DNA of 64,000 bases from positions 373,350 through 437,349 of the forward strand of contig NIVC01000608.1 in the NCBI GenBank assembly GCA_002269645.1, given 5' to 3'. Below, piece after piece: positions 15,553-40,634 of the stretch. Position numbers and translations under genes: made by a program. This DNA is from Macrostomum lignano (taxonomy: Eukaryota). Numbering within the stretch: position 1 is the first letter of the stretch; every line of letters starts with the position of its first letter. The notes below the pieces were generated by a model that had not been told where the DNA came from, made no database searches, and was given only the letters and a program-made list of their open reading frames with translations.

Positions 15553-15662
15553 AGTGCAGCTATAGACTTACTGGCGAACCTAACTGGTCTATTGTCCGCA
15601 TGGCCTGAGGCAATCGTGTTGAACTATAAAACCAGATTGCGAAGCTGATGATAACTCGCTTT

Positions 15663-15668
15663 AATAAA
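15663..15668 (+). terminator. PolyA signal of RPL5
   Basis: AATAAA about 110 nt after the stop codon. Confidence 0.6.
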
Positions 15669-16366: not shown

Positions 16367-16500
16367 AAGGAGGTTGTAGTCCAGACTCGCGACTAAAAGG
16401 TCGGGGGTTCGATTCTCGAACCAGTCGAAACAATTTGGGTCCAGTGAGCAAAACACTCAACTCTGCATTGGTGATCCCCCAATCATTGGACTGAACAGCC
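16367..16500 (+). mobile_element. 5'-degenerate tRNA-derived SINE
   Basis: gactcgcgactaaaaggtcgggGGTTCGATTCTCg (B box), followed by gtgagcaaaacactcaactctgcattg, similar to the central box of many metazoan tRNA-SINEs. Confidence 0.5.
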
Positions 16501-17084
16501 GTACGCAGCCTTCAGATGCGTTGCGTTGAGCTGTCGGTTGCACATCAATTATTAATTATGTATCTTAAAAATACAAAACGATTTTAAAATACCCATTCTT
16601 TGTCAATTTAATTTTTTGCCTTCACTAGTTAATTTTGAGAAGACTGCATTGAGTCTGGTAATGGCAACCGTGTGGCACATTTATTAGATGTGTTGTGTTG
16701 CAAAACAATAGTTTATTGCATTTACCACAGTAAAGAGAGATTAAGCAGACCATCACAGTCTCAAGCCTTGCAGCTATCACCACTCTATAAAATCAATGTT
16801 AATATACCTACTACTAAAATAATTCATGCATAACAAACGATCGGTGAGTAATAAAAGCAGCAACAACAGAGGGCAAATAACAGAAAAGCAACTCAGAATG
16901 TAGAATTATTATGTGGATGGCGTGATGTTTAGGATTTTTGTTTTACTACTGCAAGTAATATTTTTGGTCGAGTCATGTAAAAACAGTAAGACGGCAACAT
17001 CTGCTATAAAATAAGCAGGTGTGGATCGAACGAGCAGGTAATCTCTGTAGACTATAAGAAGCTATGGCCCTTCGAGGGACCAGG

Positions 17085-17945
17085 GAATCAGAGGATCAGG
17101 AAGGGCGCGGCGCCGTTAAAGAGGATCAGGAAGTGGGTGGCGCGGAACCGTTCAAGAGGATCAGGAAGGGGGCGGCGCCATCAAAGAGGATCAGGAAGGG
17201 CGAGGCGCCATCAAAGAGGATCAGGAAGGGGAAGGCGCCATCAAAGAGGATCAGGAAGGGGGCGGCACCATCAAAGAGGATCAGGAAGGGGGCGGCGCCA
17301 TCAAAGAGGATCAGGAAGGGCGAGGCGCCATCAAAGAGGATCAGGAAGGGGAAGGCGCCATCAAAGAGGATCAGGAAGGGGAAGGCGCCATCAAAGAGGA
17401 TCAGGAAGGGCGAGGCTCCATCAAAGAGGATCAGGAAGGGGGCGGCGCCATCAAAGAGGATCAGGAAGGGGAAGGCGCCATCAAAGAGGATCAGGAAGGG
17501 GAAGGCGCCATCAAAGAGGATCAGGAAGGGCGAGGCTCCATCAAAGAGGATCAGGAAGTGGGTGGCGCGGAACCGTTCAAGAGGATCAGGAAGGGGGCGG
17601 CGCCATCAAAGAGGATCAGGAAGGGCGAGGCGCCATCAAAGAGGATCAGGAAGGGGAAGGCGCCATCAAAGAGGATCAGGAAGGGGAAGGCGCCATCAAA
17701 GAGGATCAGGAAGGGCGAGGCTCCATCAAAGAGGATCAGGAAGGGGGCGGCGCCATCAAAGAGGATCAGGAAGGGGGCGGCGCCATCAAAGAGGATCAGG
17801 AAGGGGGCGGCACCATCAAAGAGGATCAGGAAGGGGGCGGCACCATCAAAGAGGATCAGGAAGGGGGCGGCGCCATCAAAGAGGATCAGGAAGGGGGCGG
17901 CGCCATCAAAGAGGATCGGGAAGAGAGCGGCGCCATCAAAGAGGA
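17085..17945. repeat. 30-bp minisatellite, about 28 copies, with 425-bp higher-order duplication
   Basis: Unit tcaggaaggg(ggc/cga/gaa)ggcgccatcaaagagga; a 35-bp variant unit recurs at 17131 and 17556. Confidence 0.97.
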
Positions 17946-18061
17946 TGAGTGGAACGTGGGGGGTGGGGGGCTCTCGTCACATCTGGATCCGGCACTGTAT
18001 ACAAGTGATATACAACAGACTAAAATTGCAGAGATTTTCAGTAGTCAAAAATCGGACAAAA

Positions 18062-21000
18062 TCAGTTTGTGGTGGCTGGCCCGCTGCTATTGTTGGCATG
18101 GTTATAAAACACGTCGAATACGGCGCCAAGCGCCCAGCTTAGTTCCACATTGCGAATCTTTTTACGCATCACAAACTTCGAACTGGGCGCAAAGCCGTAG
18201 CCTTCGGTTAATAGAGCGGCCTGGTAGCACAGGTCCAGGCAGTGGAACGGCTGCTTGCTGTCGCTGTTGCGTCGATTGCAAGCGGCCTTTGCAGCGTTGG
18301 CGATGTCGGCCAGGGTCACCTCGCCGCCCTCCTTGGCGCCGATCAAGCCCGCATCGGCTGCCCGATCGTAGAAATAGCTGAAGGCGTAGAAACGGCCGGT
18401 GGCCAGCCCGGTCAGTTGATGGACGCCAGCCGAGCGAACAACGCCAATGGCGAGACGGCGACAGGCGGCGTAGGGATCGGGAGAGGCGCTGCCTGCGGTT
18501 TTTGAAGGAGAAAAAGGATTGGACAACATGATCATCCTTCAGTTCCCGCACCTCAATGATCCTTCAGTTCACGCACCCTCATGATCCTTCAGTTTTCGCA
18601 CCTCAATGATCCTTCAGTTCCCGCGCCCCAATGACAATGATCCTCCTTCAGTTCCCGCACCCCAATGATCCTTCAGTTCCCGCACCCCAATGATCCTTCA
18701 GTTCCCGCACCCCAATGATCCTTCAGTTCCCGCACCCCAATGATGCTTCATTTCCCGCACCCCAATGATGCATCAGTTCCCGCACCCCAATGATCCTTCA
18801 GTTCCCGCACCCCAATGATGCATCAGTTCCCGCACCCCAATGATCCTTCAGTTCCCGCACCCAATGATCCCTTAGTTCCCGCACCCCAATGATCCCTTAG
18901 TTCCCGCACCCCAATGATCCCTTAGTTCCCGCACCCCAATGATGCATCAGTTCCCGCACCCCAATGATCCTTCAGTTCCCGCACCCCAATGATGCATCAG
19001 TTCCCGCACCCCAATGATCCTTCAGTTCCCGCACCCCAATGATCCTTCAGTTCCCGCACCCTAATGATCCTTCAGTTCCCGCACCCCAATGATCCTTCAG
19101 TTCCCGCACCCCAATGATCCTTCAGTTCCCGCACCCTAATGATCCTTCAGTTCCCGCACCCCAATGTTGCATCAGTTCCCGCACCCCAATGATGCATCAG
19201 TTCCCGCACCCCAATGATCCTTCAGTTCCCGCACCCCAATGATCCTTCAGTTCCCGCACCCCAATGATCCTTCAGTTCCCGCACCCCAATGATCCTTCAG
19301 TTCCCGCACCCCAATGATCCCTTAGTTCCCGCACCCCAATGATCCCTTAGTTCCCGCACCCCAATGATCCTTCAGTTCCCGCACCCCAATGATCCCTTAG
19401 TTCCCGCACCCAATGATCCCTTAGTTCCCGCACCCCAATGATCCCTTAGTTCCCGCACCCCAATGATCCTTCAGTTCCCGCACCCCAATGATCCTTCAGT
19501 TCCCGCACCCCAATGATCCTTCAGTTCCCGCACCCCAATGATCCCTTAGTTCCCGCACCCCAATGATCCTTCAGTTCCCGCACCCCAATGATCCTTCAGT
19601 TCCCGCACCCCAATGATCCTTCAGTTCCCGCACCCCAATGATCCTTCAGTTCTCGCACCCCAATGATCATTCAACCGTAATTAGCTTCATCAATCAGCAA
19701 GTCCTTTCCCAAGCGGGCCACCTCACCAGTAACATTATAGAGAATGCCTCCGTGCTCCCACTGGCCAGTGTAGTTGCTAGGCAGACACGCCGTCACAAAC
19801 TGTTTAGAGCCCCCGGCTCCGCTAGAGGGCAATTTTCCCTGGCTGCTCAGCTGCAGAATGGCCAGACGGGCGGACATGAGGCCCAGGCCCAGGTAGCTGT
19901 GAGAGTACAGTCTGGCATCCGCACCTCCAAGACTCAGCCGCTTCACAAACCCGGCCGGCACCGCGGAAGCGACGTTAGCCGAGGGCAGAGCAAATGTCAC
20001 CTGGTTTGGAATTGATTGATTTATCATTCATTAAAATGAGAACATCACGCTAAATCACACGTGTAAAAGGCGGCTACACTCTCAGATCGTGAAAATTTCG
20101 CAGACTACCCTGAGCAGGCGCACAAGCGCGCGGATACGTACGCAGTCATACGCACAGGCACACACTCGCACAGGAGTGTACAGCGGCCCTTATATAACTT
20201 TAGGCATGTACACTTCACCAAAACTACCACTAAACCTTTTTACTTTCTATTTTGAAAAATCTGCACTCAATATTGACATCTTTGCATTCAATTTTGACAG
20301 TCTGTGGTATCCTGGACCTGGGATCAGCGAACACCCGCCGGGGCGATTGACCAGGGCGAACTCTCACCGGATTAGTCAGGACGCGTAGGCCCGGCTAGGG
20401 TTGGGATCTGAGCTATAATTGTCACTATTGGATGCAATCTGTCAAAAATGGAGGCACATATGCAAGTTTTGTTCCATAGACGGCGAGACAAAGGCACTGT
20501 TTTGTAACCCAGTGTCAAAATTGCTTGCAAATTGTTAAAAAAGGTTGGAGTTTGTCAATTTCAGTTGAAATTCGTCACTATTGCATTCGGGTTTGTCAAA
20601 ACAGGTTGAACCAAAGAGTATTGAGGTCGCCTAGTATAGAGTGCCAATAAGGATGAAAATCTGAGGCCGATTTTCAGAATCCACCCACCCCTCCGGTCAC
20701 CAAGCTTTTTAGTCTATGGCACAAGTTGTGGCTAGAATGGTGTACAAAGCCGATGCTCAGAAATATAAGACATTTCACACTTAGAAAATGCATGTATCAA
20801 ATAAGCAAGACAACATCGCTCAGTCACCACAATCAGCTGCCGTCGTCGATACACAACTTGTGCCATAGACTAAACAGCTTGGTGACCGGAGGGGGTGGGT
20901 GGATTCTGAAAATCGGCCTCAGATTTTCATCCTTATTGGCACTCTATACTAGGCGACCTCAATACTCTTTGGGTTGAACATTTCAACAAGCGATGCCACA

Positions 21001-22615
21001 GACTGTCAAAATTGAATACAAAGATGTCAATATTGAGTGCAGATTTTTCAAAATTAGAAAGTAAAAAGGTGTAGGCTACGCCCCCCCCCTATTTTCGAGA
21101 TAGAAAGTGCAATTGAACAATTATGGGTTTCCTCTTTTGATCGATTTTGATTTTGTGTGAGTGCACACAGACACGATAAAAAGTACATTTAGTCCCTACA
21201 AACCTGTGTACTGCCGCCACCCAAGTCCAATGCACCGTAGGAATCCTCAGGCTTCGCCAATTGGCCGTTGAGAAAGTTCAGCGTCACCCAACTGAAAATG
21301 CCTTCGTCAAGGCCGTCCATGATGGCGACCGAGTCTCTGTCCATCGCGAATGGCGACTTGGCTAGCAGCTGGCGAACCTGTGTTGGAGTAGAGGCGGGCA
21401 GACGGATAGAGGAGGCTGCAGGGATGGTGGGGGGCCTCAGACTGAAGAATCGGGGGCTGGTGGGGGGGGAGGCCTCAGACTGAAGAATCGGGGGCTGGTG
21501 GGGGGGGAGGCCTCAGACTGAAGGATCGGGGGCTGGTGGGGGGGGAGGCCTCAGACTGAAGGATCGGGGCTGGTGGGGGGGGGGGGAGGCCTCAGACTGA
21601 AGAATCGGGGGCTGGTGGGGGGGGAGGCCTCAGACTGAAGGATCGGGGGCTGGTGGGGGGGGGAGGCCTCAGACTGAAGGATCGGGGGCTGGTGGGGGGG
21701 GAGGCCTCAGACTGAAGAATCGGGGGCTGGTGGGGGGGGGGGAGGCCTCAGACTGAAGAATCGGGGGCTGGTGGGGGGGGAGGCCTCAGACTGAAGAATC
21801 GGGGGCTGGTGGGGGGGGCCCAGACTGAAGGATCAGGGGCTGGTGGGGGGGGCTCAGGCTTAAGAAGGCCTCAGACTGAAGGATCGGGGGCTGGTGGGGG
21901 GGAGGCCTCAGACTGAAGGATCGGGGGCTGGTGGGGGGGGAGGCCTCAGACTGAAGAATCGGGGGCTGGTGGGGGGGGGAGGCCTCAGACTGAAGAATCG
22001 GGGGCTGGTGGGGGGGGAGGCCTCAGACTGAAGAATCGGGGGCTGGTGGGGGGGCCCAGACTGAAGGATCAGGGGCTGGTGGGGGGGGGGGGCTCAGGCT
22101 TAAGAAGGCTTCAGACTGAAGAATTGGTAGGGGTCAAAGAACCTGACCTCAGACAGAATGCGGGCGGAAGTCTCAGGCTTGAGCAGTCTCAATCCAGCTG
22201 TAGCCTTCAGCGCCAGCGGAGTGCTAGTCCAGTAGTGTGCCGGTATGCGCCTCTTGCAGGCGTCAATTAAATCGGCCAGGCTGGCTGCGGCCCGGCGCGG
22301 ATCGCGGGCGAAGGCGGACAGGCCTGGCCGGACCTGCTGGAACAGCTCGTTGATCAGCACGTAGGGCTGCTTGCGGCCGCGTTGGTAGCGAAATTCGAAC
22401 ACGTGCACCCGCGACCCAGTGCTGCCAGCGTCCAAGATGATGCCGTAGCGCGGCTCGCCCGGATACTGTTCATTAAGCGGATGCGTTAGGCCGCCATTTG
22501 TTAAGTTATATAGGCATAGCAACAGCATGACAACCGTTGCCAAGGCGCCGGCGTAGCATAGTAAACGCCTACTGCGTATTGATTGAAGCCTAGGCGTTAG
22601 ACTAAAAGTGTACAT
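18062..22615 (-). CDS. ENTPD6: Ectonucleoside diphosphatase, ENTPD5/6-like (GDA1/CD39 family), type II membrane
   Basis: Exons 22615-22148 (frame open to 22696), 21377-21204, 20000-19727, 18492-18062; phases 0, 0, 1 consistent; about 448 aa. Apyrase regions DAGSTGSR, PGLS, KATAGLR, MDGLDEGIFSW, DLGGGSTQ, SWALGA; single N-terminal hydrophobic helix. ENTPD5 versus ENTPD6 is not resolvable by eye. Confidence 0.93.
18528..19668. repeat. 25-bp minisatellite, about 45 copies, filling ENTPD intron 3
   Basis: Unit atgatccttcagttcccgcacccca; intron spans 18493-19726. Confidence 0.97.
20231..21073. mobile_element. Foldback/MITE-like element with nested inverted repeats, ENTPD intron 2
   Basis: Outer arms of about 75 bp (about 20233-20308 vs 20993-21071) flanked by TA; inner arms of about 120 bp (20609-20730 vs 20852-20972); both pairs near-perfect. 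Confidence 0.85.
21425..22125. repeat. 38-41 bp G-rich minisatellite, about 18 copies, ENTPD intron 1
   Basis: Unit ggcctcagactgaagaatcgggggctggtggggggg(g)a with variable G-run length. Confidence 0.96.
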
Positions 22616-23291
22616 AGCCTGTCGCATTGTGCCGAAGGAAAACAATGTCAATTCGCTGCTGTCTGTCGACTCATGATCGGTACGGTTGCCAGGCATGAAT
22701 AATGGGGATCTTCCTTATATAACGCTACGAGTTTGTCCCTTATAGGTCAGGGCTCCCCCTATTACATTTATTTGCCCGCCGTGCAAGCTTTCTGTGCCAA
22801 CACTATACTTTCTACTTATCAGTAGACTAACTCAGAAACTAATTAGCTTGAACGGTAGTTATCAGTTGCTGTTTAACTAATATATTATGCTAATTAGCTA
22901 AAGGGAGCAGTTGCTTTTTATCTCATATATTTATTAGGAAGCAGTTGTTTAATCAATAAAAGCTAGGGAAGAATTGTATGATTTTCCGAAATCGCAGTCT
23001 TTAGTTAACAAACAACATTTTATTGCACATTACATGTTTTACAAGCAAAACTGCATTACTGAATAGCTTTCAATCTTGTTTAATACAACATGAATTGCCG
23101 AAATGCATGCGGAAAACTAGCAGTTTTTGGAACTGTGACAACTAACTAATTAATTAAGCAAGCAATCAATGAAGATGGTTTGTACGACGGTTAAAAACTA
23201 TGCATTTTTTTAATTTGCCTACTAGCAGTAGCAATAGCAGAAAAAATCGCGTAAAATGTTTGAGATTTTTTAAACAGCTCTTTTTAATCAG

Positions 23292-26200
23292 CTAATCGTC
23301 TGATTCCAAAGCCGAGTTGATTGCCGAACGCCAGGCCTCGGACAGTCGGCCGGCCAAAAGGCCGCCAGCGCAGGCGGCCAACTGGCGGCACTCGGCGTCC
23401 GGCTCGTTGTCGATTGAGTTGAAAAAATTGCCAGCCTCACTGCTACTGGCAACGGTCAACAACTCCTGGGTGAGGGCGGCCGGAGTGGCCAAGCCTAGGC
23501 AGGCGTAGCAGAACAGGGCGCCTCGGCGAACCGGCGCTTCCGGGTGGCGAACTACTACTGGAAGTAGTTCGGCTAGAGCGGACAGCATTCGGGCCTGTAA
23601 GTTATTGGTGTTTGGTAAATCTATTGATTTAAATGTGCAGTGCAGCAATGCACTGGATGGGCGAGAGGCTGGCAAAGCGGCAACGCGCCCCACTCCCGAA
23701 TCGAAGTCCCCGGGTTCGAATCCATCGAGCAGACCCACTTATTTAAGTGTTAAGATAAGGAATTTCGACTTTCTAAACATTATCAAACAATAGCCAGTTT
23801 ACGAAGAAAGAATGTGTACGAATAGAAGTCAGTAAAAAGAAATGAATCGAAAGCCGATATGTATCGTTAATAACTTTACACAATATTATAAGTGTGCGCA
23901 TAGATCTGTAAAGGTTGTAACTTAGTGTCAATAAAATATGCTGGATCATAATATTCCAGGTTTTCTGGAGAAAACCTACGCGCTTATTATGGGTAAAAGG
24001 CTGTTTTCTAATAAGCTAGTGCCTCGGCATCCAAATTAGCTATTTCTGTGTACGCTTTGTTTCCTTTTTAATCCGCATGCATGACATTAAATCCTATTTT
24101 AAACACAATTTTATTATACCTGTCCTGGCGAGTTCTCGGCGCAAAAGTACACTACGCCGAGTGTGTACAGCAGCCTGCACAGTACCGGATAATCCGGCCC
24201 AATCAGATCCAGATGTCTGGCCTGCGTGTCGAATCCGCGCGCCAGGCCGAAGAAAAACTCGCCGGCGTGTTGGCTGAAGGCGTTGACTGAGGAATCCTGC
24301 TGATGGACTGGACGGCCCCAGCGACGCGTCACCCGGCCGACGGTGGGCATCGGCGGTGATGCCACAGCGGTCACAGGCGGACTCTTCGCCCGGCTTAGAG
24401 ACAAGGCGGCAGTCTGCAGGGCTAGCAGGGCGTCCAGCCGCTGACTGGTGCAGTACTCGGGCAGGAACACCTGGCTAGCCAGGTAGGGAGCCACTGAGCC
24501 GGGATCCGAGCAGACTAGCTCAGTCAGGGCGGCCATTCGCTTTTCGGCAAAGCCTTCAACAATAGCATCGTCGCTGTCGGAGTTCAGGTTGAGCAGGGCG
24601 CTAGCCAGGTCGAGACTGAGCTCGCGAACTGCGCCCGGATGTTCGGCGATGAGCTGGCGAGCTGCGATGAGGCTGGCCCGAAGCTGGTCCCTCTCCTCCG
24701 GCGCTGTTGCTCTCAGGCCGTCCAACAGTTGACGAATGTAGCGCGGCCGATTAGCGTCAGGCGCTGGCCCGTCCGTTGCTAGGGACGCTTGAATTGGTCG
24801 AAGCTTTTCGTCGCTGTCATCGTCAGATTCGTCGTCATCAGAGTCCAATGGTTCAATGGGCGCCAATGACGCTTGCTTTTTGTCGCTTGAGTCCCCTAGC
24901 AACGGATTCTTAGAATCTTCTAGCCTTCCTGGCAACGGATTCTTAGAACCATCTGGCGTCCCTGGCAACGGATTCTTTGTACCATCTGGCGTCCCTGGCA
25001 ACGGATTCTTAGTACCACCTGGCGTCCCTGACAACAGATTCTTAGAATCATCTGGCGTCCCTAGCAACGCTTTATCAACCGGCTTGTCGATGTCATCAAC
25101 AAAGTCCAGATCGCCGTAGGCAAGCCGTTTAATCAGATTCGAGTCCGGACAGGCCGGCTGGTCAAATTTAAGCCGACGCTCGTCATCGGAGCCGCCGCCG
25201 ACGCTGCCAAGTCGCAACAAATCTGTGACCACTTCGCCAGTAGCCATGCCGATCCAGCGAAAATTGTCGGCATTGTGCTCAAAGTGAGCAGCGATGCCCG
25301 GCACCAGTATGGCTACTAGTTGATCGCGCGCCGATTTCACTTCACTGGAGTTGGTGTCGTCGGCAGACAGCAGCCTGGCGCCGACAACTAGGAACCAGGT
25401 GATGTGCCGGTGCTGCTCGATACCGTTGGAGCGGACCACTACAGGCTGAGACCAGATGCGGCCGGCCTCTAGAAGTGCCCGGCAGAATAGAGACCAGTCG
25501 GCCCAGTGCAGGTACCTTAATTTAATGTTTACAAGATTGTCTCAATAGACGGTTATAATAAAATGGTACTAGGGGTTAGGGCTGGGCAGGAAGCTCTCAG
25601 AACGGGGATAGGGTGGAGTGGGAGGGGCTCGCAGAACGGGTATAGGGTGGAGTGGGAGAGGCTCACAGAATTTGAGGAGGCTCACAGGGTGGGTATAGGG
25701 TGGAGTGGGAGAGGCTCACAGAATCTGAGGAGGCTCACAGGGTGGGTATAGGGTGGAGTGGGAGAGGCTCACAGGGTGGGTATAGGGTGGAGTGGGAGAG
25801 GCTCAGAATTTGAGGAGGCTCACAAGGTCAGTATAGGGTGGAGTGGGAGGGGCTCAGAATTTGAGGAGGCTCACAAGGTCAGTATAGGGTGGAGTGGGAG
25901 GGGCTCACAGGGTGGGTATAGGGTGGAGTGGGAGGGGCTCACAGGGTGGGTATAGGGTGGAGTGGGAGAGGCTCACAGAATCTGAGGAAGCTCACAGGAG
26001 AACACAGGTACACAATAGCTATGATGCATTATATTTAAGGTCAGCTTAAAAAATCCATAATCTAAATCTCAGCCCTAAGCTTACCTGGCAATATTCCTGG
26101 CCGGCAAACTGCGATTGAATCGCCTCACAAACAGCAACTTGTCGGTTAGCAACAAACGAGCCGTTGCGGCGGCTTCCTTAGCAACCAGATTTCGACCGAA

Positions 26201-26941
26201 ATAATGGCACAGACTATTAAAATTGGTGCAACTAGCGATAGGCCAAGTTAGCAGATTCTCCAGATGCGCCGGGTCCGCCTTGGACAGCAGGTTGGCGACT
26301 GCGCCTTCGGCCAGCGAGCCGTTCTCTACCGCCGTCCAAAATTCTGCCTGCCGGCCGTTCAAGCAGAGCAAGCCGGCCAGGCGGGCGCAGCGTCCGGCGT
26401 CGGCGCGCCTAGCCAGACAGTCGACCAGCCGGTGGCACAGCAGGCGGCTCAGCGACGGCTCGGTCAGCAGGTCAGGCGCCGGCTCCATCGAGGCGGCGAC
26501 GGTGGCCAAGCGGTTCGACACCACGGTGGACAGGTTAGCCAGCCAGCGCGACACGGCCTCGTCTTCGGCCGGGTCAGCGCCGCCGCCGCCTCCGAGGAGA
26601 AATTCGGCCGGCCGGTCGCCAGTCAAATAGCGAATCGTCAGGCGGATGACGGCGGCCAATGGCCGGCCAGACCGACAGGCTCGCCAGCGGGACAGCAGAG
26701 CCGCCAGCGACACGGCCGGGGGCAGCACGTCGATAAGGCGATCGGCAGCGTCGGACAAGCCGGACAGGCGACCGGCAGCTTCCGGACAGGCGAGCGAATC
26801 TACGATAGCTTGGAGCAGCGAGCCGCCAGCGTGGCTTAGCAGCGTTGGCCGGACGGCCGGATCGGCTAGCAGGGACTCCAGCTCGGACAGTGGGCCGGCA
26901 GGTGACGATGAATCGAGCACGCGACGGAATAGTGGATCCAT
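23292..26941 (-). CDS. TELO2: Telomere length regulation protein TEL2 homolog (TTT complex)
   Basis: Exons 26941-26085, 25515-24120, 23594-23292; phases 2, 0; 851 aa. Matches TELO2 landmarks: LDSDDDESDDD acidic CK2 motif, P.YIRQLLDGL, RELSLDLASALLNL, YLASQVF..YCTSQRLDAL, NAFSQHAGEFFFGL, EPDAECRQLA. Confidence 0.92.
23661..23733 (+). mobile_element. tRNA(Arg)-like SINE head with intact A and B boxes, TELO2 intron 2
   Basis: A box TGGCAAAGCGG, B box GGTTCGAATCC, spacing colinear with the tRNA-Arg at 40562; stems do not pair. Confidence 0.6.
24891..25070 (-). repeat. Coding 33-bp minisatellite (11-aa unit), about 5.5 copies, in TELO2 exon 2
   Basis: gcaacggattc recurs at 24899, 24932, 24965, 24998, 25031 (variant) and 25064; encodes KNPLPGTPDG(S/T). 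Confidence 0.95.
25600..25997. repeat. G-rich minisatellite (34-bp core, 50-53 bp variants), TELO2 intron 1
   Basis: Core gggtatagggtggagtgggagaggctcacagggt, with optional gaatttgaggaggctcaca insert. Confidence 0.93.
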
Positions 26942-26984
26942 GGGCTGGCGGGCTTCGGCTTTTGGACACGAGATTGGGGTGTGT

Positions 26985-27352
26985 GGCTAGGCGGAGGTTG
27001 GGATTGGTTGGTAGGCGGAGATTGAGGTGGGTGGCTAGACTGAGGTTGGGGTTACTTGGTAGGCGGAGGATGAGGTGGGTGGCTAGACGGAGGTTGGGGT
27101 TGGTTGGTAGGCGGAGGTTGAGGTGGGTGGCTAGGCGGTGGCTGGGGTTGGTGGCTAGGCAGAAGTTGAGGTGGGTGGCTAGGTGGAGGTTGGGTGGGTT
27201 GGTAGGCGGAGGCTGAGATGGGTGGCTAGGCGGAGGCTGGGGTTGGTGGCTAGGCGGAGATTGAGGTGGGTGGCTACGCGGAGGCTGGGGTTGGTGGCTA
27301 GGCGGAAGTTGAGGTGGGTGGCTAGGCGGAGGTTGGGGTGGGTTGCTTGGCG
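26985..27352. repeat. 24-bp monomer / 48-bp dimer minisatellite filling the TMEM170-TELO2 spacer
   Basis: Alternating ggctaggcggaggttggggttggt and ggtaggcggagattgaggtgggt units; about 15 monomers. Confidence 0.93.
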
Positions 27353-27390
27353 GTGGTTTAGGGCCAGAAGATGCTTCTTTTTGAAGATGG

Positions 27391-27816
27391 TCAAAGTACG
27401 GAGGTGAGCCCAGAGAAAGGCAGCACAGCCGAGACCAAATTAAGCAGGACGCCCCAGCCTGCGGCGTGATAATAAGTGAAGAAGCTGTGCCCAAGCAGGC
27501 CGGCTGAATAATAGACAAAAGCAACGCAGAGGCTGCTAACGGCGTGACCGGGGAGACTGTAGATCAGGCCGCCGGTGAATACGACAGGCGCCAGTCGGCC
27601 AACTGGGTGACCGCGCAATCGGACAGCTGCAACTGCCAGACCGATGAGGTGCAAAGCAATGGAGAGCAGGCCGGTCCACAGGAACACCGCCCACCAGATG
27701 CCAGCGTAGCTGCTGCCGCTTGTGCCAATGATGTCGTTAATTGGATCGTCTGACGGCGAAACTGCGCTATCTCCAGCAGTTAAATTCAACGCCTGAAATT
27801 GGGAAGACAAATTCAT
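27391..27816 (-). CDS. TMEM170: Transmembrane protein 170 homolog
   Basis: 141-aa ORF with three hydrophobic helices; IWWAVFLW, LRGHPVGR and SSLCVAFVYYSAG align by eye to TMEM170A MWYGVFLW, LRHHKYGR and TSAAIAGVYRAAG. Confidence 0.85.
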   Translation of the reverse strand: MNLSSQFQALNLTAGDSAVSPSDDPINDIIGTSGSSYAGIWWAVFLWTGLLSIALHLIGLAVAAVRLRGHPVGRLAPVVFTGGLIYSLPGHAVSSLCVAFVYYSAGLLGHSFFTYYHAAGWGVLLNLVSAVLPFSGLTSVL

Positions 27817-27954
27817 TTAGTTTCAAAGCCCAAATAAAAGCGAATCCCACAACAATAGATCCCTGCTTTTGTCTTAAAGGTATCGAAATTGCACTGGACA
27901 AGACTTTATAGGAACCACAACTCCTGGTTGCTATGGTACGAGTAGTCTTCCTGG

Positions 27955-29055
27955 GCCATCTTAGCAACGGCTTCTCGATGTGTTCTGGGCTGCCTTACAA
28001 ACGGTTTCTCTGTGCGTTCTGGGCTGCCTTAGCAACGGCTTCTCGATGTGCTCTGGGCTGCCTTAGAAACGGTTTCTCTGTGCGTTCTGGGCTGCCTTAG
28101 CAACGGCTTCTCGATGTGCTCTGGGCTGCCTTAGAAACGGTTTCTCTGTGCGTTCTGGGCTGCCTTAGCAACGGCTTCTCGATGTGCTCTGGGCTGCCTT
28201 AGCAACGGCTTTTCGATGTGTTCTGGGCTGCCTTAGCAACGGCTTCTCGATGTGTTCTGGGCTGCCTTAGCAACGGCTTCTCGATGTGCTCTGGGCTGCC
28301 TTAGCAACGGCTTTTCGATGTGTTCTGGGCTGCCTTAGCAACGGCTTCTCGATGTGTTCTGGGCTGCCTTAGAAACGGTTTCTCTGTGCGTTTTAGGCTG
28401 CCTTAGCAACGGCTTTTCGATGTGTTCTGGGCTGCCTTAGCAACGGCTTCTCGATGTGCTCTGGGCTGCCTTAGCAACGGCTTCTCGATGTGTTCTGGGC
28501 TGCCTTAGCAACGGCTTCTCGATGTGTTCTGGGCTGCCTTAGAAACGGTTTCTCTGTGCGTTTTAGGCTGCCTTAGCAACGGCTTTTCGATGTGTTCTGG
28601 GCTGCCTTAGCAACGGCTTCTCGATGTGTTCTGGGCTGCCTTAGAAACGGTTTCTCTGTGCGTTTTAGGCTGCCTTAGCAACGGCTTTTCGATGTGTTCT
28701 GGGCTGCCTTAGCAACGGCTTCTCGATGTGCTCTGGGCTGCCTTAGCAACGGCTTCTCGATGTGTTCTGGGCTGCCTTAGCAACGGCTTCTCGATGTGTT
28801 CTGGGCTGCCTTAGCAACGGCTTCTCGATGTGTTCTGGGCTGCCTTAGCAACGGCTTCTCGATGTGTTCTGGGCTGCCTTATTAACGGCTTCTCGATGTG
28901 TTCTGAGCTGCCTTAGCAACGGCTTCTCGATGTGTTCTGGGCTGCCTTATTAACGGCTTCTCGATGTGTTCTGGGCTGCCTTAGCAACGGCTTCTCGATG
29001 TGTTCTGGGCTGCCTTATTAACGGCTTCTCGATGTGTTCTGAGCTGCCTTAACAA
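27955..29055. repeat. 34-bp minisatellite, about 32 copies, between HINT3 and TMEM170
   Basis: Unit ctgggctgccttagcaacggcttctcgatgtgtt; a 35-bp variant (agaaacggtttctctgtgcg) recurs. Confidence 0.97.
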
Positions 29056-29396
29056 GTTCTGTGAGGTATCTGAGCAACCCTAGCAACGGCTGCTTTGAGA
29101 AATCATAGCGTCTCTACAAACACCTTTTTTCTTTATCAAAACTTCTACTCTTGTAAGACGCATATAGGGCGATTCTTAAATGGGTTTAAAATGCAACTTT
29201 CTAATCTAGTAAAAAGGTACCTCTTAAAAAAAAAAAGTCAAGACCACGAAATAAATTTAAAATACTTTATAATTTATTAGTCTATCACAGATGATAATTA
29301 ATCGATGTGCATAACTATAGACAAGAAAAGTACACAGCATGTATAACGTCACAATAATGACTGAAGACAAAATATTACAAATGTTTATCAAATATT

Positions 29397-29402
29397 TTTA
29401 TT
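29397..29402 (-). terminator. PolyA signal of HINT3
   Basis: AATAAA on the minus strand about 22 nt after the stop codon. Confidence 0.6.
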
Positions 29403-29423
29403 CACTATTATCGCCATAAATAA

Positions 29424-32400
29424 TTAGTCCGGTAGATTATTTAGATACTCCATCAGACTCGGCACCTGTGTAAAATCAATGGACAGTATTATAATTATTA
29501 ACAAACACGGCTTATTGAGGCCATATTGTCTTAACAGTTAACACTGATCGTATTTCACAAACTCACCGTGCAGAACCAATATGAATTGGGGCGAAAAATT
29601 AATCGCGACAGCCAAGTCAGTTCGGATTCTGGCCAAATCAAATGCACGTGAAAGTGCTTTACTAGACAGAAAGGCGGCCAGTGCAAACCCACCCTGCGTT
29701 GAACAGAGACAGGAGGATGCGTTCGTCATTGCATTCACATGGCTGAGGGCGATTCTCACTGCATTCACATGGCTGAGGGCGATTCTTTTTGCATTCACAT
29801 GGCTGAGGGCGATTCTCACTGCATTCACATGGCTGAGGGCGATTCTTTTTGCATTCACATGGCTGAGGGCGATTCTTACTGCATTCACATGGCTGAGGGC
29901 GATTCTTACTGCATTCACATGGCTGAGGGCGATTCTTACTGCATTCACATGGCTGAGGGCGATTCTTATTGCATTCACATGGCTGAGGGCGATTCTGATT
30001 GCATTCACATGGCAGAGGGCGATTCTTACTGCATTCACATGGCTGAGGGCGATTCTTACTGCATTCACATGGCTGAGGGCGATTCTTACTGCATTCACAT
30101 GGCTGAGGGCGATTCTTACTGCATTCACATGGCTGAGGGCGATTCTTACTGTACTCACATGGCTGAGGGCGATTCTGATTGCATTCACATGGCTGAGGGC
30201 GATTCTTATTGCATTCACATGGCTGAGGGCAATTCTTACTGCATTCACATGGCTGAGGGCGATTCTTACTGCATTCACATGGCTGAGAGTGATTCTTATT
30301 GCATTCACATGGCTGAGGGCGATTCTTATTGCATTCACATGGCTGAGGGCGATTCTTACTGCATTCACATGGCTGAGGGCGATTCTTATTGCATTCACAT
30401 GGCTGAGGGCGATTCTTACTGCATTCACATGGCTGAGGGCGATTCTTATAGCATTCACATGGCTGAGGGCGATTCTTACTGCATTCACATGGCTGATGGC
30501 GATTCTTACTGCATTCACATGGCTGAGGGCGATTCTTACTGCATTCACATGGCTGAGGGCGATTCTTATTGCATTCACATGGCTGAGGGCGATTCTTACT
30601 GCATTCACATGGCTGAGGGCGATTCTTACTGCATTCACATGGCTGAGGGCGATTCTTACTGCATTCACATGGCTGAGGGCGATTCTTACTGCATTCACAT
30701 GGCTGAGGGCGATTCTTACTGCATTCGCATGGCTGAGGGCGATTCTTACTGCATTCACATGGCTGAGGGCGATTCTTACTGCATTCACATGGCTGAGGGC
30801 GATTCTTATTGCATTCACATGGCTGAGGGCGATTCTTACTGCATTCACATGGCTGAGGGCGATTCTTATTGCATTCACATGGCTGAGGGCGATTCCTTTT
30901 GCATCGGTGTGATTGGATGTTCCTTATTATATTCAAATGCTCGGAAGTATTTTAGCTACTCAAACTTAAATGCTTAAATGCAGGAAAGACTTGAGTAAAT
31001 TTGAAATAATATAATTGGCACACCTGGTCTCTAGCCTGTTGCCACCCAGTTTCTCAATCGCTCCAAGTCCTGCCTCAACAAGTGACTCCACCAATGCAAT
31101 ATCAGATTTGGTCAGATGCTTGGCATCAGGGATGTGTTGGGCTGGACAGGCTAATAGGTGATGTTGGCTAGCTGGACGAATGTCACGAAATACCACAAGC
31201 TCATCTGTCTAAAAATTGCAATAGGATTAATAGGATTATTTTAAATTTCTAACTATGACTGATTGACTGTCCTTATAATATGCACATTGTTCTAGAGTTT
31301 CTTAGGGCTATAGCTAAAATATTTAATACAAGAGCTGTTTGCTAGGACATTTATTATCTCCATATAAATTTTTACTACCACATTGAAACTGCTCAAATTA
31401 AATTAAAAATTAAAATTCTGCTTGAAGAGCCACATTTAATGCTTCAATTGTTTTGAATAGCTTTTGGGTTATGACTCAATAAATGATGAGTTCCAAGAAA
31501 GTGTACTGCATTGATTATAAATACTATTTATATTAATCAAGTTCTATAACATTACCATTTGTACCATACCATACATGCCCAACCTCAAAATTTCACCTAT
31601 CCAGTGCAACTCAGTTTTGTTCTGATTTACGACTTAGTTTTTCCTGATTGCAGCTTAGTTTCTCCCAATAGTGACTTAGTTCCTTTTGATTGTGACTTAA
31701 ATTTCACTTTGTTATGACTTTTCTTGCCTTTTACTATTTTCTTCTCTTTCTCTCTCTCTTCTTTCTCCTTTCTTTTCCTTTTCTCTTTCTCTCCTTTCTT
31801 TCTTCCTCAAATTTTTTGTTTTTCACATTTTTTATTTTGCGACTTACCCTGGCCAGCGGCCATTTCACCCATCTGGTTTGGATGGGTGTTAGGCATGTAT
31901 GATTTGTACACTAGAAATTTCTGGCATACAAACAAAATAATCTCCTTTAAAGTTGGCACACACATTTTGGCATACCAATTCATGTCAATATTTGGGATAC
32001 AAATTTTAGAGCACAAAAAAATATTTTTTATGTCCTTTTGGCATATACAATTTTGGCATAAATTTTCCCATACATCTTGGGATGAGTAAACTATGCAATA
32101 TTATCTAACTATGCAATTATAATTATGCAATTATATAATAAATAAAAGTTTGTATAATATAAAAGTTAAATATTTCAATGATAAAATGTTTATTTCTTAA
32201 AATTTGTTGTAAAAACTAATTAAAATATGCTAAAAACTTTTAATTTAATATTGTTTTTTTATAAAGAAAATTTGGCATTTTTTGGAATTTTTTCAAAGGT
32301 TAGATAAGATATTTATCTAACAATTGATATTTGTCATTTTAGATTTTGACTTTTTCTAATTCTTTTTCAAATCTTAATTGAATCTTGATTTAAAAAGGCT

Positions 32401-32844
32401 AAGAATCTGAGATGTAAATAAAGTAGAAAATAAAGAGCCTTTTATTGGGTACTTTGCCTTTTTGACTTATTTGAATTTAATAGGCCTATCTAAATCACTT
32501 TAGTCACTTTTGTTAATCTAATAGTAGTTTCAAAATTGACAATGCAATGGAAAGTATGTAAAATCTTTAACTCATATTAGACATCAGCTTTCACAAAAAA
32601 TATAATAAATTAGTTTTTTTTCTAAGATACATACAGGATATAGAGTCCTCTAAACTATTGCTGGGAAAAATAATAAAATAGTGTTTAACTGATATGTTTA
32701 AAAAATATATGTAATAGAAAATACATATAGAAAAAATATCTATTTTAAATATCAATTTAATGACTTATACATACCGACCTTTAGTACAATTGACTGACTA
32801 TTTGGGGACTCTCCTGAAGCATATTCACAGAAAACACATGCCAT
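29424..32844 (-). CDS. HINT3: Histidine triad nucleotide-binding protein 3 (not captured by the ORF track)
   Basis: Exons 32844-32779, 31208-31024, 29693-29567, 29465-29424; phases 0, 2, 0; 139 aa: MACVFC..VFRDIRPASQHHLL..HI..VGLHWPPFCLVKHFHVHLI..IFRPNSYWFCT. HxHxHxx triad; GxHxPPF and NSYWF are HINT3-type. Confidence 0.92.
29728..30903. repeat. 30-bp minisatellite, about 39 copies, HINT3 intron 2
   Basis: Unit gcattcacatggctgagggcgattcttact; very homogeneous. Confidence 0.99.
31560..31935 (-). repeat. Dispersed repeat, copy B, in HINT3 intron 1
   Basis: Inverted homolog of 12135-12490. Confidence 0.85.
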
Positions 32845-34719
32845 TTTGTCTCGATGCGCTTATTGGCTCTTTTAGTGCTTTTATTAGGACCTATGCACAA
32901 CTCAACAGAACAGCTTCACTATTACTGTATTTTATAATAACCCAGATAAATGTTCACCATTAGCAAAAGCCTAAGCCCATATCGCAGTATACACTGTAAG
33001 CCCGAGTTGTATTTCTGGATGTTGATATGGTAGAAAGATACTTTTGACGTTTAGCTTAGCTTAGCTTAGCACTGTTTATAATATATAATATACCTACTTA
33101 TACTTAAATGCGAAAAAATCTAATTTACGCTATTATCACCTAACACGCTCACAGGCAGGCCACCAGTAAGTTACAGATGAAAAATTGTTTCTTATAAAAA
33201 TTGAAATCAATTTTTGTACTGGAATACTTATCTCGTAACGAAACAAACTTAATATCAAAATTTTTTTATAAAAATATAAGAAACTAAATAGTGTCATATA
33301 AGACTTTAATTCTGGTTATTGCATTGCCAGCCAAACAAAAAAGTTTTTATTTAGATTTTCATTTTGCGTTACATGTCAGAAGACAATGCTGGAGTAAAAC
33401 ATTATGGCTTTGGCATCGTAAAAACAGTTTAGCTTTAACAATGAAAAGGAAATACAGCTTCTGATTCTGAAGGTTCCTACACAAGCTGACCGACATATAC
33501 TATACTCCACCTTACTTAGAGAGAGATCTATAGAGCGCGATTACATGTACATGTACATCGATTTCATAGCTGCATACACACTGCAGTGTGACTGTACACC
33601 TATAACTGTATAGTCTGAGACTGAAATGCAAATGTAATTTATTATTTAATGGAAATACACGTTAAAGTAAATGTAGAGAGCCAGGAAAAGTCGGTTCCAT
33701 ATTTTTACTGCATGGATATATGTACTGCATGAAAAAATATCAGAGGGACTAAAGAGTATTTGTACATGTACATGTAGTCCCTATGAATGGTGAGGAAAAC
33801 CTATACATATGCGGTTCAGATGCTGAACCCGCCGAGATTCGGAAAATACATGTAGAAGCAGAAACCATGCTCGTAGTTCTCGGCCGATTATTACACAACC
33901 TAAATCAAAAAACAAAACAATTCACATTTGTGCTCAGACAATAGTTTATTACTGTATTTACAGCACAGAGTACTAGATCCAATTGTATATGTTCTTTCTG
34001 TACATGTTTTCGCGTGCTAATGTCTTAAGATTTAAAAAAATCCAATTGTGTAAATTTTTAAATAATAACTAGCTATTTTCTCGTTTATGGTATTATACAT
34101 GTATATGGTGTACAAAGTACATATTAACTCCATAGTAAATTTTGTTAAACTAAATTTATCTTGACACAATTAGCAAAGGCGCTGATTTAAAAGATATCGC
34201 GTGCACTTCTGCAGATAACTAATATTTATCGAGAAAAAATAAGTTGGTATTATAGTGTATGATAAGAAGCGAGGCGTATAAAAATTACAAGTTCAGATTC
34301 ATAATTCCATCAAGGCTTGCAAGAACTACAAAAGCATGTATGTTTATGTAATTTTTGGATTTGCTTTAATTCCATTATCAGGCTTTTATACTATAAGCGA
34401 TTCTAAAAATTTTAAGATGCTTTTATTTAACAATTCTGACCAGCGGGGGTTCTATAGTTTTTATTGATTGGTTAATTATCAATAATTTACGAAAATACTT
34501 TCTTACTTTCACTTTTTTGTCATTGACGAGAGCTACATGTTGCAAATTCAAAGTGACATATTCGATCTGTCTGAAGTTCGAAGAGTGACTCAATCTAGGA
34601 CAGAGTGACCCACCCAGTTCACCACATAAAGCGACCCAGTTCAGGAAATACTGACCCAGTCCACTTCGAGTAACCCACGAGTAACTCACGAGTAACCCAA
34701 TTCTTCACAAAAGACTGAC

Positions 34720-40561: not shown

Positions 40562-40634
40562 GGCCGCGTGGCGCAATGGATAACGCGTCTGACTACGGAT
40601 CAGAAGATTCCAGGTTCGAGTCCTGGCGTGGTCG
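40562..40634 (+). tRNA. tRNA-Arg-ACG: tRNA-Arg (anticodon ACG)
   Basis: 73-nt cloverleaf: GGCCGCG/CGTGGTC acceptor, TCTGA-CTACGGA-TCAGA anticodon arm, CCAGG-TTCGAGT-CCTGG T arm; T4 at 40643-40646. Confidence 0.97.

What the first reader, a model, noticed from the sequence alone, without database searches (positions are those of the whole stretch)
18062..32844. Candidate four-gene operon HINT3 > TMEM170 > TELO2 > ENTPD5/6 with satellite-inflated spacers
Seen: four conserved genes head-to-tail on the minus strand. Stop-to-start gaps are about 1610, 450 and 680 bp, but only about 500, 85 and 680 bp once arrays are removed. An AATAAA (22767-22772) sits about 150 nt upstream of a polypyrimidine CAG acceptor (22619-22620) 3 nt before the ENTPD ATG. 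Known: SL trans-splicing resolves polycistronic pre-mRNA in nematodes, tunicates and flatworms. Inference: one promoter upstream of HINT3 drives a PIKK chaperone, two ER/Golgi proteins and a HIT hydrolase; this specific linkage is not one I recognise.
Basis: partly seen in the sequence, partly recalled or inferred. Interest (0 to 1): 0.7.

Follow-up and report, generated by a model that had tools for sequence, protein, structure and literature searches.

The report
Possible flatworm operon with minisatellite spacers
Four intact housekeeping genes lie head-to-tail in the flatworm Macrostomum lignano, a species already known for spliced-leader operons with repeat-swollen spacers. The middle pair probably shares a transcript, but a single four-gene operon is not shown.

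Summary
The window is Macrostomum lignano scaffold NIVC01000608.1. HINT3, TMEM170, TELO2 and an ENTPD5/6-like gene are intact and tandem on the minus strand. The gaps are 1607, 449 and 676 bp, or 511, 56 and 676 bp without the arrays.

M. lignano operons resolved by one spliced leader (SL), with repeats inflating their spacers, were published in 2021, so the kind is known.

- **TMEM170>TELO2:** this is the best-supported polycistronic pair. It has a 56-bp array-free spacer and no AATAAA/ATTAAA hexamer. TMEM170 has no deposited coding sequence in any of three paralogous copies. TELO2's deposited transcript must reach into the array.
- **TMEM170 acceptor:** it has a consensus acceptor TTTCAG|G, in frame with the SL's AUG.
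- **ENTPD:** the deposited coding sequence is 5'-partial and starts at 22693. There is no AG there, and a TATATAA lies 26-28 nt upstream. This points to its own start site, or to a cut at the TELO2 poly(A) site.
- **HINT3>TMEM170:** linkage is open.
- **Arrays:** they are ordinary for this genome. They make up 25% of the window, all have unrelated units, and copy number varies from 3 to 32 between paralogues.

No SL-read data could be reached.

The parts
32845..34400 (-). AT-rich region (33% GC) upstream of HINT3, the only candidate promoter for a polycistron. TATAAAA lies at 32936-32930, 92 nt before the ATG. There is no acceptor-like CAG within 30 nt of the ATG.
   Evidence: The nearest upstream same-strand gene (Pins/GPSM, stop near 42082) is 9 kb away, with two plus-strand tRNA-Arg genes in between.
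29424..32844 (-). HINT3 gene, 139 aa with HIT motif HFHVHLI. Exons are 32844-32779, 31208-31024, 29693-29567 and 29465-29424.
   Evidence: Pfam DcpS_C/HIT. The model has GT-AG introns and is an exact match to UniRef A0A1I8IHU0 'HINT3'.
29730..30895 (.). 30-bp minisatellite, 38.9 copies, inside HINT3 intron 2.
   Evidence: This intron is 1330, 2276 and 1000 bp in the three copies.
27817..29423 (-). Spacer 1 (HINT3>TMEM170), 1607 bp. AATAAA lies at 29402-29397 and 29278-29273. The 34-bp array at 27960-29055 has 32.2 copies. TATAAAG lies at 27910-27904.
   Evidence: The spacer is 1607, 851 and 579 bp in the three copies, with 32.2, 11.2 and 3.2 array units.
27793..27798 (-). TTTCAG, the candidate SL trans-splice acceptor of TMEM170. 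The first exon base, 27792, is in frame with the SL's 3' AUG.
   Evidence: It is the only [T/C]TNCAG near the gene start. It matches the published acceptor motif (PMC8629364) and is conserved in copy B.
27391..27816 (-). TMEM170 ORF, a single exon of 141 aa. It would be 134 aa if started by the SL AUG. It has no Met after residue 1.
   Evidence: Pfam Tmemb_170, E = 9e-13. Exons are 99.5% identical and the protein is the same in copy B. It is not deposited as a coding sequence in any copy.
26942..27390 (-). Spacer 2 (TMEM170>TELO2), 449 bp, 62% GC. The 24-bp pyrimidine-rich array at 26970-27362 has 16.2 copies. There is no AATAAA/ATTAAA, no TATA-like motif and no [T/C]TNCAG. It holds 16 C/T-rich YAG sites.
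   Evidence: The spacer is 305 bp with 10.4 units in copies B and C.
23292..26941 (-). TELO2 gene, 851 aa. Exons are 26941-26085, 25515-24120 and 23594-23292.
   Evidence: Pfam Telomere_reg-2. It aligns to human TELO2 332-824. The model is an exact match to PAA79936.1.
24894..25069 (-). In-frame 33-bp (11-codon) minisatellite, 5.3 copies, inside TELO2 exon 2.
22697..23291 (-). Spacer 3 (TELO2>ENTPD), array-free and 36% GC. AATAAA lies at 23024-23019, 22935-22930 and 22772-22767. It has a single TATATAA at 22721-22715.
22693..22695 (-). 5' end of the deposited ENTPD transcript, inferred from the partial coding sequence that starts at CCT 22693. It follows 'TTCATG' with no AG, and lies 26-28 nt downstream of the first T of TATATAA.
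   Evidence: PAA79935.1, 'partial', 474 aa, starts PGNRT.
22619..22621 (-). It is in frame with the SL AUG but does not match [T/C]TNCAG. It is not the deposited 5' end.
18062..22696 (-). ENTPD5/6-like gene. Exons are (22696/22627/22615)-22148, 21377-21204, 20000-19727 and 18492-18062. Arrays at 21425-22106 and 18534-19673 lie in introns 1 and 3.
   Evidence: Pfam GDA1_CD39 on all exons, tblastn of homologues, and the model.
14012..15552 (+). RPL5, convergent with ENTPD, which closes the cluster. It also serves as a control. The acceptor tttcag lies at 14006-14011, and the deposited coding sequence starts at GCC 14013.

Best explanation
This is a compact tandem cluster of four intact, conserved housekeeping genes in Macrostomum lignano, present in three paralogous copies. 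It is of the kind that this species' literature classes operationally as an SL trans-spliced operon.

The most likely reading is a mixed arrangement, not one clean four-gene operon.

- **TMEM170 and TELO2 are transcribed together (inferred).** TELO2 has no room or sequence for its own promoter. TMEM170 has no canonical poly(A) hexamer before TELO2.
- **TMEM170 is probably trans-spliced at TTTCAG|G (27793/27792).** The SL's own AUG would then act as initiator (inferred from motif and frame).
- **HINT3 may or may not feed into that transcript.** It has its own AATAAA signals, and a TATA-like element follows them.
- **ENTPD has a separately annotated transcript.** Its 5' end lies 26-28 nt after the only TATA box in the spacer, which suggests its own start site.
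- **The minisatellites are neutral passengers.** They are everywhere in this genome, carry no AATAAA/ATTAAA on the transcribed strand, and change copy number quickly. They inflate spacers without breaking the units.
For: **Organism and known biology.**
- ENTPD exon 1 is 100% identical to a M. lignano UniRef entry, and the window is an exact substring of NIVC01000608.1.
- PMC8629364 reports 30% of genes SL-spliced and 15% in operons. Its repeat-adjusted threshold is under 1 kb, and it shows repeats inflating operon spacers.

**Geometry.** Gaps are 511, 56 and 676 bp without arrays. No opposite-strand gene lies inside the cluster.

**TMEM170>TELO2.**
- There is no AATAAA/ATTAAA, TATA-like motif or AT-rich sequence in 449 bp.
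- TMEM170 is conserved: 2 differences in 426 bp and an identical protein in copy B.
- It has no deposited coding sequence in any copy, and the accessions PAA73339, PAA73340 and PAA73341 are consecutive.
- TELO2's coding sequence is deposited as complete. Its transcript must therefore start above the in-frame TAG at 26989-26987, that is, within or above the array.

**TMEM170 acceptor.** It is the only [T/C]TNCAG near the start. It is in frame, and no other Met exists in the ORF.

**Control.** RPL5's deposited coding sequence (310 aa) starts one base after tttcag|. SL sites therefore do appear as 5'-partial coding sequences in this annotation.

**ENTPD.** The partial coding sequence starts at 22693, with no AG there. 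The single TATATAA in the 692-bp spacer 3 scan (23291-22600) sits at -26 to -28. By my own estimate this would happen by chance about 1.6% of the time.

**Arrays.** They make up 25% of the window and their units are unrelated. Copy numbers are 32/11/3 and 16/10/10 across the paralogues. None contains AATAAA or ATTAAA on the transcribed strand.
Against: - No SL-containing reads, poly(A)-site data, cap data or pre-mRNA reads could be reached. Every statement about transcription is indirect.
- The missing TMEM170 coding sequence could be an ORF-calling failure rather than a shared transcript.
- HINT3 is also undeposited in copies A and C but deposited in copy B. This could mean a longer polycistronic annotated transcript, which would favour a bigger operon. 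It could equally be annotation noise among near-identical copies.
- The ENTPD 5' end at 22695-22693 follows a CA and lies 19 nt after an A/T-rich hexamer. It could instead be the point where the annotators' pipeline cut a TELO2-ENTPD transcript at TELO2's poly(A) site. That would favour co-transcription.
- TATA-like heptamers are expected about once per 600 bp in AT-rich sequence.
- Spacers diverge between paralogues about as much as introns do, so there is no conservation signal either way.
Confidence: 0.5

Rival explanations
1. A single promoter upstream of HINT3 makes one pre-mRNA covering all four genes. SL trans-splicing and polyadenylation then resolve it into four mRNAs.
For: - All three gaps pass the published repeat-adjusted threshold of under 1 kb (PMC8629364).
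- Four-gene operons exist in this species.
- Acceptor-like CAGs lie 0-3 nt from the start of each downstream ORF, and all three are in frame with the SL AUG.
- AATAAA at 22772-22767 lies about 150 nt before CAG 22621-22619, close to the roughly 100-nt modal spacing.
- No array carries a poly(A) hexamer on the transcribed strand.
- HINT3 and TMEM170 coding sequences are missing from copies A and C, as expected if one long annotated transcript yields only its longest ORF.
- ENTPD's annotated 5' end could be a poly(A)-site cut of a joint transcript.
Against: - The TELO2 and ENTPD acceptors do not match [T/C]TNCAG.
- Neither one is the deposited 5' end, while RPL5's SL site is.
- The ENTPD transcript starts at a non-AG position 26-28 nt after a TATA box.
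- Spacers 1 and 3 (about 510 and 600-680 bp) are AT-rich. They hold canonical AATAAA signals followed by TATA-like motifs, and are several times the roughly 100-bp mode.
- HINT3 is deposited as a separate gene in copy B.
Confidence: 0.22
2. Four ordinary, independently transcribed genes packed in a gene-dense island. Each has its own promoter, some may be SL trans-spliced as monocistronic units, and no polycistronic pre-mRNA matters functionally.
For: - 60% of SL-spliced genes in M. lignano are not in operons.
- TATA-like motifs lie 92-94 nt upstream of an ATG for HINT3 (32936), TMEM170 (27910) and ENTPD (22721 relative to ATG 22627).
- Canonical AATAAA signals follow HINT3 and TELO2.
- ENTPD and HINT3 (in copy B) are deposited as separate genes.
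- Four genes on the same strand has a chance probability of about 1/8.
Against: - TELO2 would need a promoter inside TMEM170 or inside a 62% GC pyrimidine-rich minisatellite.
- There is no poly(A) hexamer for TMEM170.
- TMEM170 has no separate deposited coding sequence in three copies.
- TELO2's deposited transcript reaches into the array.
Confidence: 0.2
3. TMEM170-TELO2 is exported as a true bicistronic mature mRNA that trans-splicing does not resolve. TELO2 is then translated by reinitiation or leaky scanning.
For: There is no poly(A) hexamer and no consensus acceptor in spacer 2. TELO2's coding sequence is complete and TMEM170 is undeposited, which is consistent with one annotated mRNA.
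Against: - Efficient translation of an 851-codon ORF after a 141-codon ORF and a 449-nt spacer is unlikely for a conserved co-chaperone.
- 16 pyrimidine-rich YAG sites in the array and CAG 26947-26945 offer possible acceptors.
- SL sites of weakly expressed genes can be missed by the annotation.
Confidence: 0.08

Closest known systems
Macrostomum lignano SL operons and 'transcriptional units' (Wudarski et al. 2017, PMC5730564; Ustyantsev & Berezikov 2021, PMC8629364)
   Same: - Same species and same single 35-nt SL ending in AUG.
- Same-strand conserved genes with repeat-adjusted gaps under 1 kb.
- Simple repeats inflating the intergenic distances.
- The first gene may be non-trans-spliced.
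- Operons of four genes are reported.
   Different: - SL reads at the downstream genes, the criterion that defines membership there, could not be checked.
- The deposited annotation does not show SL-type 5' ends for TELO2 or ENTPD, and lacks TMEM170 altogether.
- Two of the three array-free gaps (about 510 and about 600-680 bp) are well above the roughly 100-bp mode.
Caenorhabditis elegans SL2-type operons (Blumenthal & Gleason 2003; Allen et al. 2011; both taken from the reference list of PMC8629364)
   Same: Head-to-tail housekeeping genes with unrelated functions under one upstream promoter. 3'-end formation is coupled to downstream trans-splicing, and operons have 2-8 genes.
   Different: C. 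elegans uses a dedicated SL2 and roughly 100-nt intercistronic regions with a U-rich element. Here there is one SL, no specialised leader, kilobase-scale spacers holding minisatellites, and possibly internal promoters, as in nematode 'hybrid operons'.
Polycistrons of parasitic flatworms (Protasio 2012; Calvelo et al. 2025, PMC12582326)
   Same: The flatworm SL ends in AUG. Candidate operons are defined by strand, distance and SL evidence at the downstream gene. Chimeric or merged gene models betray polycistronic pre-mRNAs.
   Different: Those studies use thresholds of 300 bp or less, and no such gene quartet is reported. TELO2 does not occur in the main text of PMC12582326, and the other three names were not searched there. 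M. lignano spacers are repeat-rich.
SL 3'-terminal AUG used as initiator methionine in flatworms (Cheng et al. 2006, cited in PMC12582326)
   Same: The TMEM170 acceptor places the SL AUG in frame directly before codon GCG, and the remaining ORF has no Met. The ENTPD and TELO2 candidate sites are also in frame.
   Different: This is not demonstrated here. A genomic ATG (27816) 24 nt upstream could serve instead if the gene is not trans-spliced. RPL5 in this window has its SL AUG out of frame.

Membership tests
SL trans-spliced operon (M. lignano operational definition, PMC8629364) | Adjacent genes on the same strand with no opposite-strand gene between them | tested here: met
   Four genes lie on the minus strand. 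No Pfam hit was found on plus-strand ORFs. No deposited gene lies between them.
SL trans-spliced operon (M. lignano operational definition, PMC8629364) | Repeat-adjusted intergenic distance under 1000 bp | tested here: met
   Stop-to-start gaps are 511, 56 and 676 bp after removing the arrays. Copy C has only 579 and 305 bp in total for spacers 1 and 2.
SL trans-spliced operon (M. lignano operational definition, PMC8629364) | The downstream gene carries the SL at its mRNA 5' end (SL reads at an AG acceptor) | tested here: inconclusive
   - No reads were available.
- TMEM170 has a consensus TTTCAG|G acceptor.
- TELO2's deposited coding sequence is complete, not 5'-partial at 26944.
- ENTPD's deposited coding sequence is 5'-partial from 22693, where there is no AG.
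- The RPL5 control behaves as an SL-spliced gene.
SL trans-spliced operon (mechanistic definition) | A single promoter and a continuous polycistronic pre-mRNA, with no independent capped start sites in front of downstream genes | not testable with these tools
   This needs CAGE or 5'-specific libraries, nascent or long-read RNA, or promoter deletion. Indirect signs go both ways. Spacer 2 has no promoter-like sequence. Spacer 3 has a TATA box 26-28 nt before the deposited ENTPD 5' end.
SL trans-spliced operon (mechanistic definition) | 3'-end formation signal of the upstream gene located in the intercistronic region | tested here: inconclusive
   AATAAA is present after HINT3 (two copies) and TELO2 (three copies). 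No AATAAA or ATTAAA lies between TMEM170 and TELO2.
HINT3 / TMEM170 / TELO2 / ENTPD5-6 gene identities | Family domain present and reading frame intact | tested here: met
   Pfam hits, the HIT motif HFHVHLI, alignment to human TELO2 332-824, source names 'HINT3' and 'ENTPD6', and exact matches to deposited proteins.

The most novel reading that the evidence does not exclude
The pyrimidine-rich 24-bp minisatellite between TMEM170 and TELO2 has the unit ...CCTCCGCCTAG on the transcribed strand, giving 16 tandem (Y)n-YAG sites. It may not be a passive filler. It could serve as the intercistronic processing element, acting as a battery of 3' splice acceptors for SL addition to TELO2, in a spacer that has no conventional poly(A) signal or consensus acceptor. 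A satellite expansion would then create or tune trans-splice sites. Alternatively, the pair may be a mature bicistronic mRNA.
Probability: 0.1. Interest if true: 0.55.

Novelty: new member of a known kind. Interest (0 to 1): 0.2.

Why it matters
This changes little for the field. SL operons with repeat-inflated spacers are already described genome-wide in M. lignano. At best this locus is one more, partly supported example.

Its practical value is for annotation.
- A conserved TMEM170 gene has no deposited coding sequence in all three copies of the deposited genome, perhaps because its start codon comes from the spliced leader or because it shares a transcript with TELO2.
- HINT3 has no deposited coding sequence in two of the three copies.
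- ENTPD is deposited with an artificial 5'-partial coding sequence.

The three paralogous copies have 3, 11 and 32 spacer repeats. They form a natural series for asking whether spacer length affects expression of the downstream gene. This could be tested in a species that has transgenesis.

Tried and rejected
- **Exact and homology look-ups of TMEM170 and of TELO2 exon 1** found nothing.
- **Searches of supplementary tables** of PMC5816591, PMC5173321 and PMC5730564 for TELO2, HINT3, TMEM170 and ENTPD, plus a full-text search, gave no hits. PMC8629364 has no supplements held.
- **Locus-tag numbers as a guide to transcriptional units.** Rejected, because the methods say the prefix marks clusters of transcripts at 95% identity or more, not operon membership.
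- **An SL relic upstream of ENTPD.** By eye the sequence before 22693 resembled the SL 3' end (15 of 23 positions). A Smith-Waterman scan of the whole window put this site below many background hits, so I rejected it.
- **The arrays as one dispersed satellite family.** Rejected, because all 25 consensus units are unrelated.
- **Conservation of spacers versus introns among the three paralogues**. Divergence is similar (spacers 4-5%, introns 2-5%), and copies B and C are nearly identical, so the test has no power.
- **Rfam and tRNA scans of the cluster**. There is no SL RNA gene or other ncRNA. A sub-threshold IRES_Bip hit (21.6 bits against a gathering score of 40) inside TELO2 exon 1 is taken as chance.
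- **SL sequence search in the window** gave no match.

Full report
**What the window is.**
- ENTPD exon 1 is 100% identical to a UniRef protein of Macrostomum lignano.
- Exact-sequence look-ups then placed my gene models in the deposited Mlig_3_7 genome.
- The locus returned for TELO2 (L002, NIVC01000608.1:386641-410290, reversed) is an exact substring of the window's minus strand, 36941..13292.
- The window is therefore the last 64 kb of that scaffold (window x = record x + 373349).
- M. lignano is a free-living flatworm with one 35-nt spliced leader (SL) ending in AUG.
- Ustyantsev & Berezikov 2021 (PMC8629364) showed that simple repeats and transposons inflate operon spacers.
- After subtracting repeats, distances between trans-spliced genes peak near 100 bp. 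The authors call an operon when the adjusted distance is under 1 kb and the downstream gene is SL-spliced.
- The general idea in the finding is thus already published for this organism.

**The observation.**
- Pfam confirms HINT3 (DcpS_C/HIT), TMEM170, TELO2 (Telomere_reg-2) and a GDA1_CD39 apyrase on the minus strand.
- I built exon models with GT-AG boundaries:
  - HINT3: 32844-32779, 31208-31024, 29693-29567, 29465-29424 (139 aa).
  - TMEM170: 27816-27391 (141 aa).
  - TELO2: 26941-26085, 25515-24120, 23594-23292 (851 aa).
  - ENTPD: ...-22148, 21377-21204, 20000-19727, 18492-18062.
- The HINT3, TELO2 and ENTPD models equal deposited proteins residue for residue.
- The gaps are 1607, 449 and 676 bp. 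The arrays at 27960-29055 and 26970-27362 leave 511 and 56 bp.
- The AATAAA at 22772-22767 and the CAG at 22621-22619 are as described.
- The cluster is closed downstream by a convergent RPL5 gene.
- Upstream lie 9 kb of AT-rich and array sequence with two plus-strand tRNA-Arg genes, before the next minus-strand gene, a Pins/GPSM homologue.
- No plus-strand ORF inside the cluster hits Pfam.

**The arrays are not special.**
- Twenty-five arrays of at least 100 bp occupy 25% of the window. Their units are mutually unrelated.
- In the cluster they lie in spacers, in four introns, in the ENTPD 3' region and in frame inside TELO2 exon 2.
- None carries AATAAA or ATTAAA on the transcribed strand.

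**Three paralogous copies.**
- The assembly holds two further copies of the whole locus. Copy B is on NIVC01001018.1. Copy C is about 84 kb away on the window's own scaffold, in inverted orientation.
- All four ORFs are intact in each copy. Exons are 95-100% identical and non-coding sequence differs by about 2.5-5% from copy A. Copies B and C are nearly identical.
- The arrays sit at the same places but differ in length:

| Feature | Copy A | Copy B | Copy C |
|---|---|---|---|
| Spacer 1 length | 1607 bp | 851 bp | 579 bp |
| Spacer 1 array copies | 32.2 | 11.2 | 3.2 |
| Spacer 2 length | 449 bp | 305 bp | 305 bp |
| Spacer 2 array copies | 16.2 | 10.4 | 10.4 |
| Spacer 3 length (to ATG 22696) | 595 bp | 600 bp | 600 bp |

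- Spacer inflation is therefore real, recent and copy-specific.
- Spacers diverge about as fast as introns, so conservation says nothing about function.

**Signals.**
- Spacer 2 stands out. It is 62% GC and has no AATAAA/ATTAAA, no TATA-like motif and no [T/C]TNCAG. Only 56 bp of it is non-array. TELO2 therefore has no visible promoter, and TMEM170 has no visible poly(A) signal.
- TMEM170 has the one consensus acceptor in the region, TTTCAG|G at 27798-27793. It lies 24 nt inside the ORF and in frame with the SL AUG. The rest of the ORF has no Met. This fits the known use of the flatworm SL AUG as initiator (Cheng 2006, via PMC12582326).
- Spacers 1 and 3 are AT-rich. They carry canonical AATAAA signals soon after the upstream stop codon, followed by TATA-like motifs at 27910-27904 and 22721-22715. 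HINT3 has a similar motif at 32936-32930.

**What the deposited annotation implies.**
- The annotators cut assembled transcripts at SL and poly(A) peaks and then called ORFs (PMC5730564).
- RPL5 gives a positive control. The only splice combination that yields the deposited 310 aa starts at GCC 14013, one base after tttcag| at 14006-14011. SL sites therefore appear as 5'-partial coding sequences starting right after the acceptor.
- ENTPD fails this test. It is deposited as 'partial', 474 aa, starting PGNRT at 22693.
- That point lies 26-28 nt after the only TATAWAW motif in the 692-bp scan of spacer 3 (23291-22600). By my own estimate the chance probability is about 1.6%.
- The same point also follows a CA, so it might be a cut at the TELO2 poly(A) site. 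I cannot separate these two readings, and they pull in opposite directions for the operon claim.
- TELO2 also fails this test. It is deposited as complete. A transcript starting at 26944 would have given a 5'-partial ORF. The deposited transcript must therefore begin above the in-frame TAG at 26989-26987, inside or beyond the array.
- TMEM170 has no deposited coding sequence in any copy, and the neighbouring accessions are consecutive.
- HINT3 is deposited only in copy B.
- The simplest reading is that TMEM170 lies on the same annotated transcript as TELO2, and in copies A and C perhaps HINT3 does too, with only the longest ORF submitted. This is inference, not observation.

**Verdict.**
- The mixed arrangement is my best explanation overall (confidence about 0.5).
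- My separate estimates for each link are:
  - TMEM170>TELO2 co-transcription: about 0.7-0.75.
  - HINT3>TMEM170 linkage: about 0.4-0.5.
  - ENTPD depending on the upstream promoter: about 0.35.
  - The full four-gene operon from one promoter: about 0.2.
- Membership in the published M. lignano operon class is met on geometry. It is untested on the defining criterion, SL reads at the downstream genes.
- The functional mix of a PIKK co-chaperone, a HIT hydrolase and two ER/Golgi proteins is typical of the unrelated housekeeping genes found in SL operons. It needs no special explanation.
- Novelty is low. At best this is a new, partly supported member of a known kind, plus some annotation corrections.

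Noticed in passing
window 24894-25069 (minus strand, TELO2 exon 2): An in-frame 33-bp (11-codon) minisatellite, 5.3 copies, encodes GTP(D/G)(D/G)(S/T)KN(L/P)L(S/P) repeats. It lies in the linker just before the acidic DSDDDESDDDSDE stretch that aligns to human TELO2 485-495. The repeat is identical in the deposited 850-aa TELO2 protein of copies B and C.
   Followed up: partly
window 27391-27816 (minus); L003 9270-9695; L004 9270-9695: The conserved TMEM170 gene has no deposited coding sequence in any of the three copies of the deposited Mlig_3_7 annotation. The intact HINT3 gene is likewise undeposited in copies A and C. ENTPD is deposited with an artificial 5'-partial coding sequence.
   Followed up: partly
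window 13292-36941 versus L003 (NIVC01001018.1:179311-202804) and L004 (NIVC01000608.1:299228-322719): The locus is triplicated. One copy lies about 84 kb away on the same scaffold in inverted orientation. Copies B and C are 0-1% apart in the centre, yet their spacer-1 array has 11.2 versus 3.2 units. This could be very fast array turnover, assembly collapse or a scaffolding artefact.
   Followed up: partly
window 25515-25516 (minus): TELO2 intron 1 ends in a rare AAG|G acceptor. The model that uses it matches the deposited 851-aa protein exactly.
   Followed up: yes
window 14006-14018 (plus) and 53997-54013 (plus): RPL5 (tttcag|GGCCATG) and TXNL1 (cccacag|CGCAGTCATG) have acceptor-like sites 4 and 7 nt before their ATGs, out of frame with the SL AUG. 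For RPL5 the deposited coding sequence starts right after the acceptor. The deposited TXNL1 annotation was not looked up.
   Followed up: partly
window 39209-39281 and 40561-40635 (plus): Two tRNA-Arg genes (anticodons CCT and ACG) lie in the gene-poor stretch between Pins/GPSM and HINT3.
   Followed up: no
window about 16380-16450 and about 23700-23740: Fragments resembling tRNA T-arms (GGTTCGAATC-type, read on the plus strand) lie downstream of ENTPD and in TELO2 intron 2. They may be tRNA-derived SINE remnants. ARAGORN and Rfam did not call them.
   Followed up: partly
window 26970-27362 (minus strand): On the transcribed strand the 24-bp array is 67% pyrimidine and each unit ends in CCTAG. 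This gives 16 YAG sites preceded by tracts that are 56-78% pyrimidine, all directly upstream of TELO2.
   Followed up: partly
whole window: 25 tandem arrays of at least 100 bp (periods 4-49 bp) cover 25% of the 64 kb. All have unrelated consensus units.
   Followed up: yes
window 42082-43488 (minus), 53980-55635 (plus), 5837-6934 (plus): Other genes in the window: a Pins/GPSM homologue (TPR + GoLoco), TXNL1 (thioredoxin + PITH) with a 22-bp array between its thioredoxin and PITH ORFs, probably intronic, and a 366-aa ORF with no Pfam hit.
   Followed up: no
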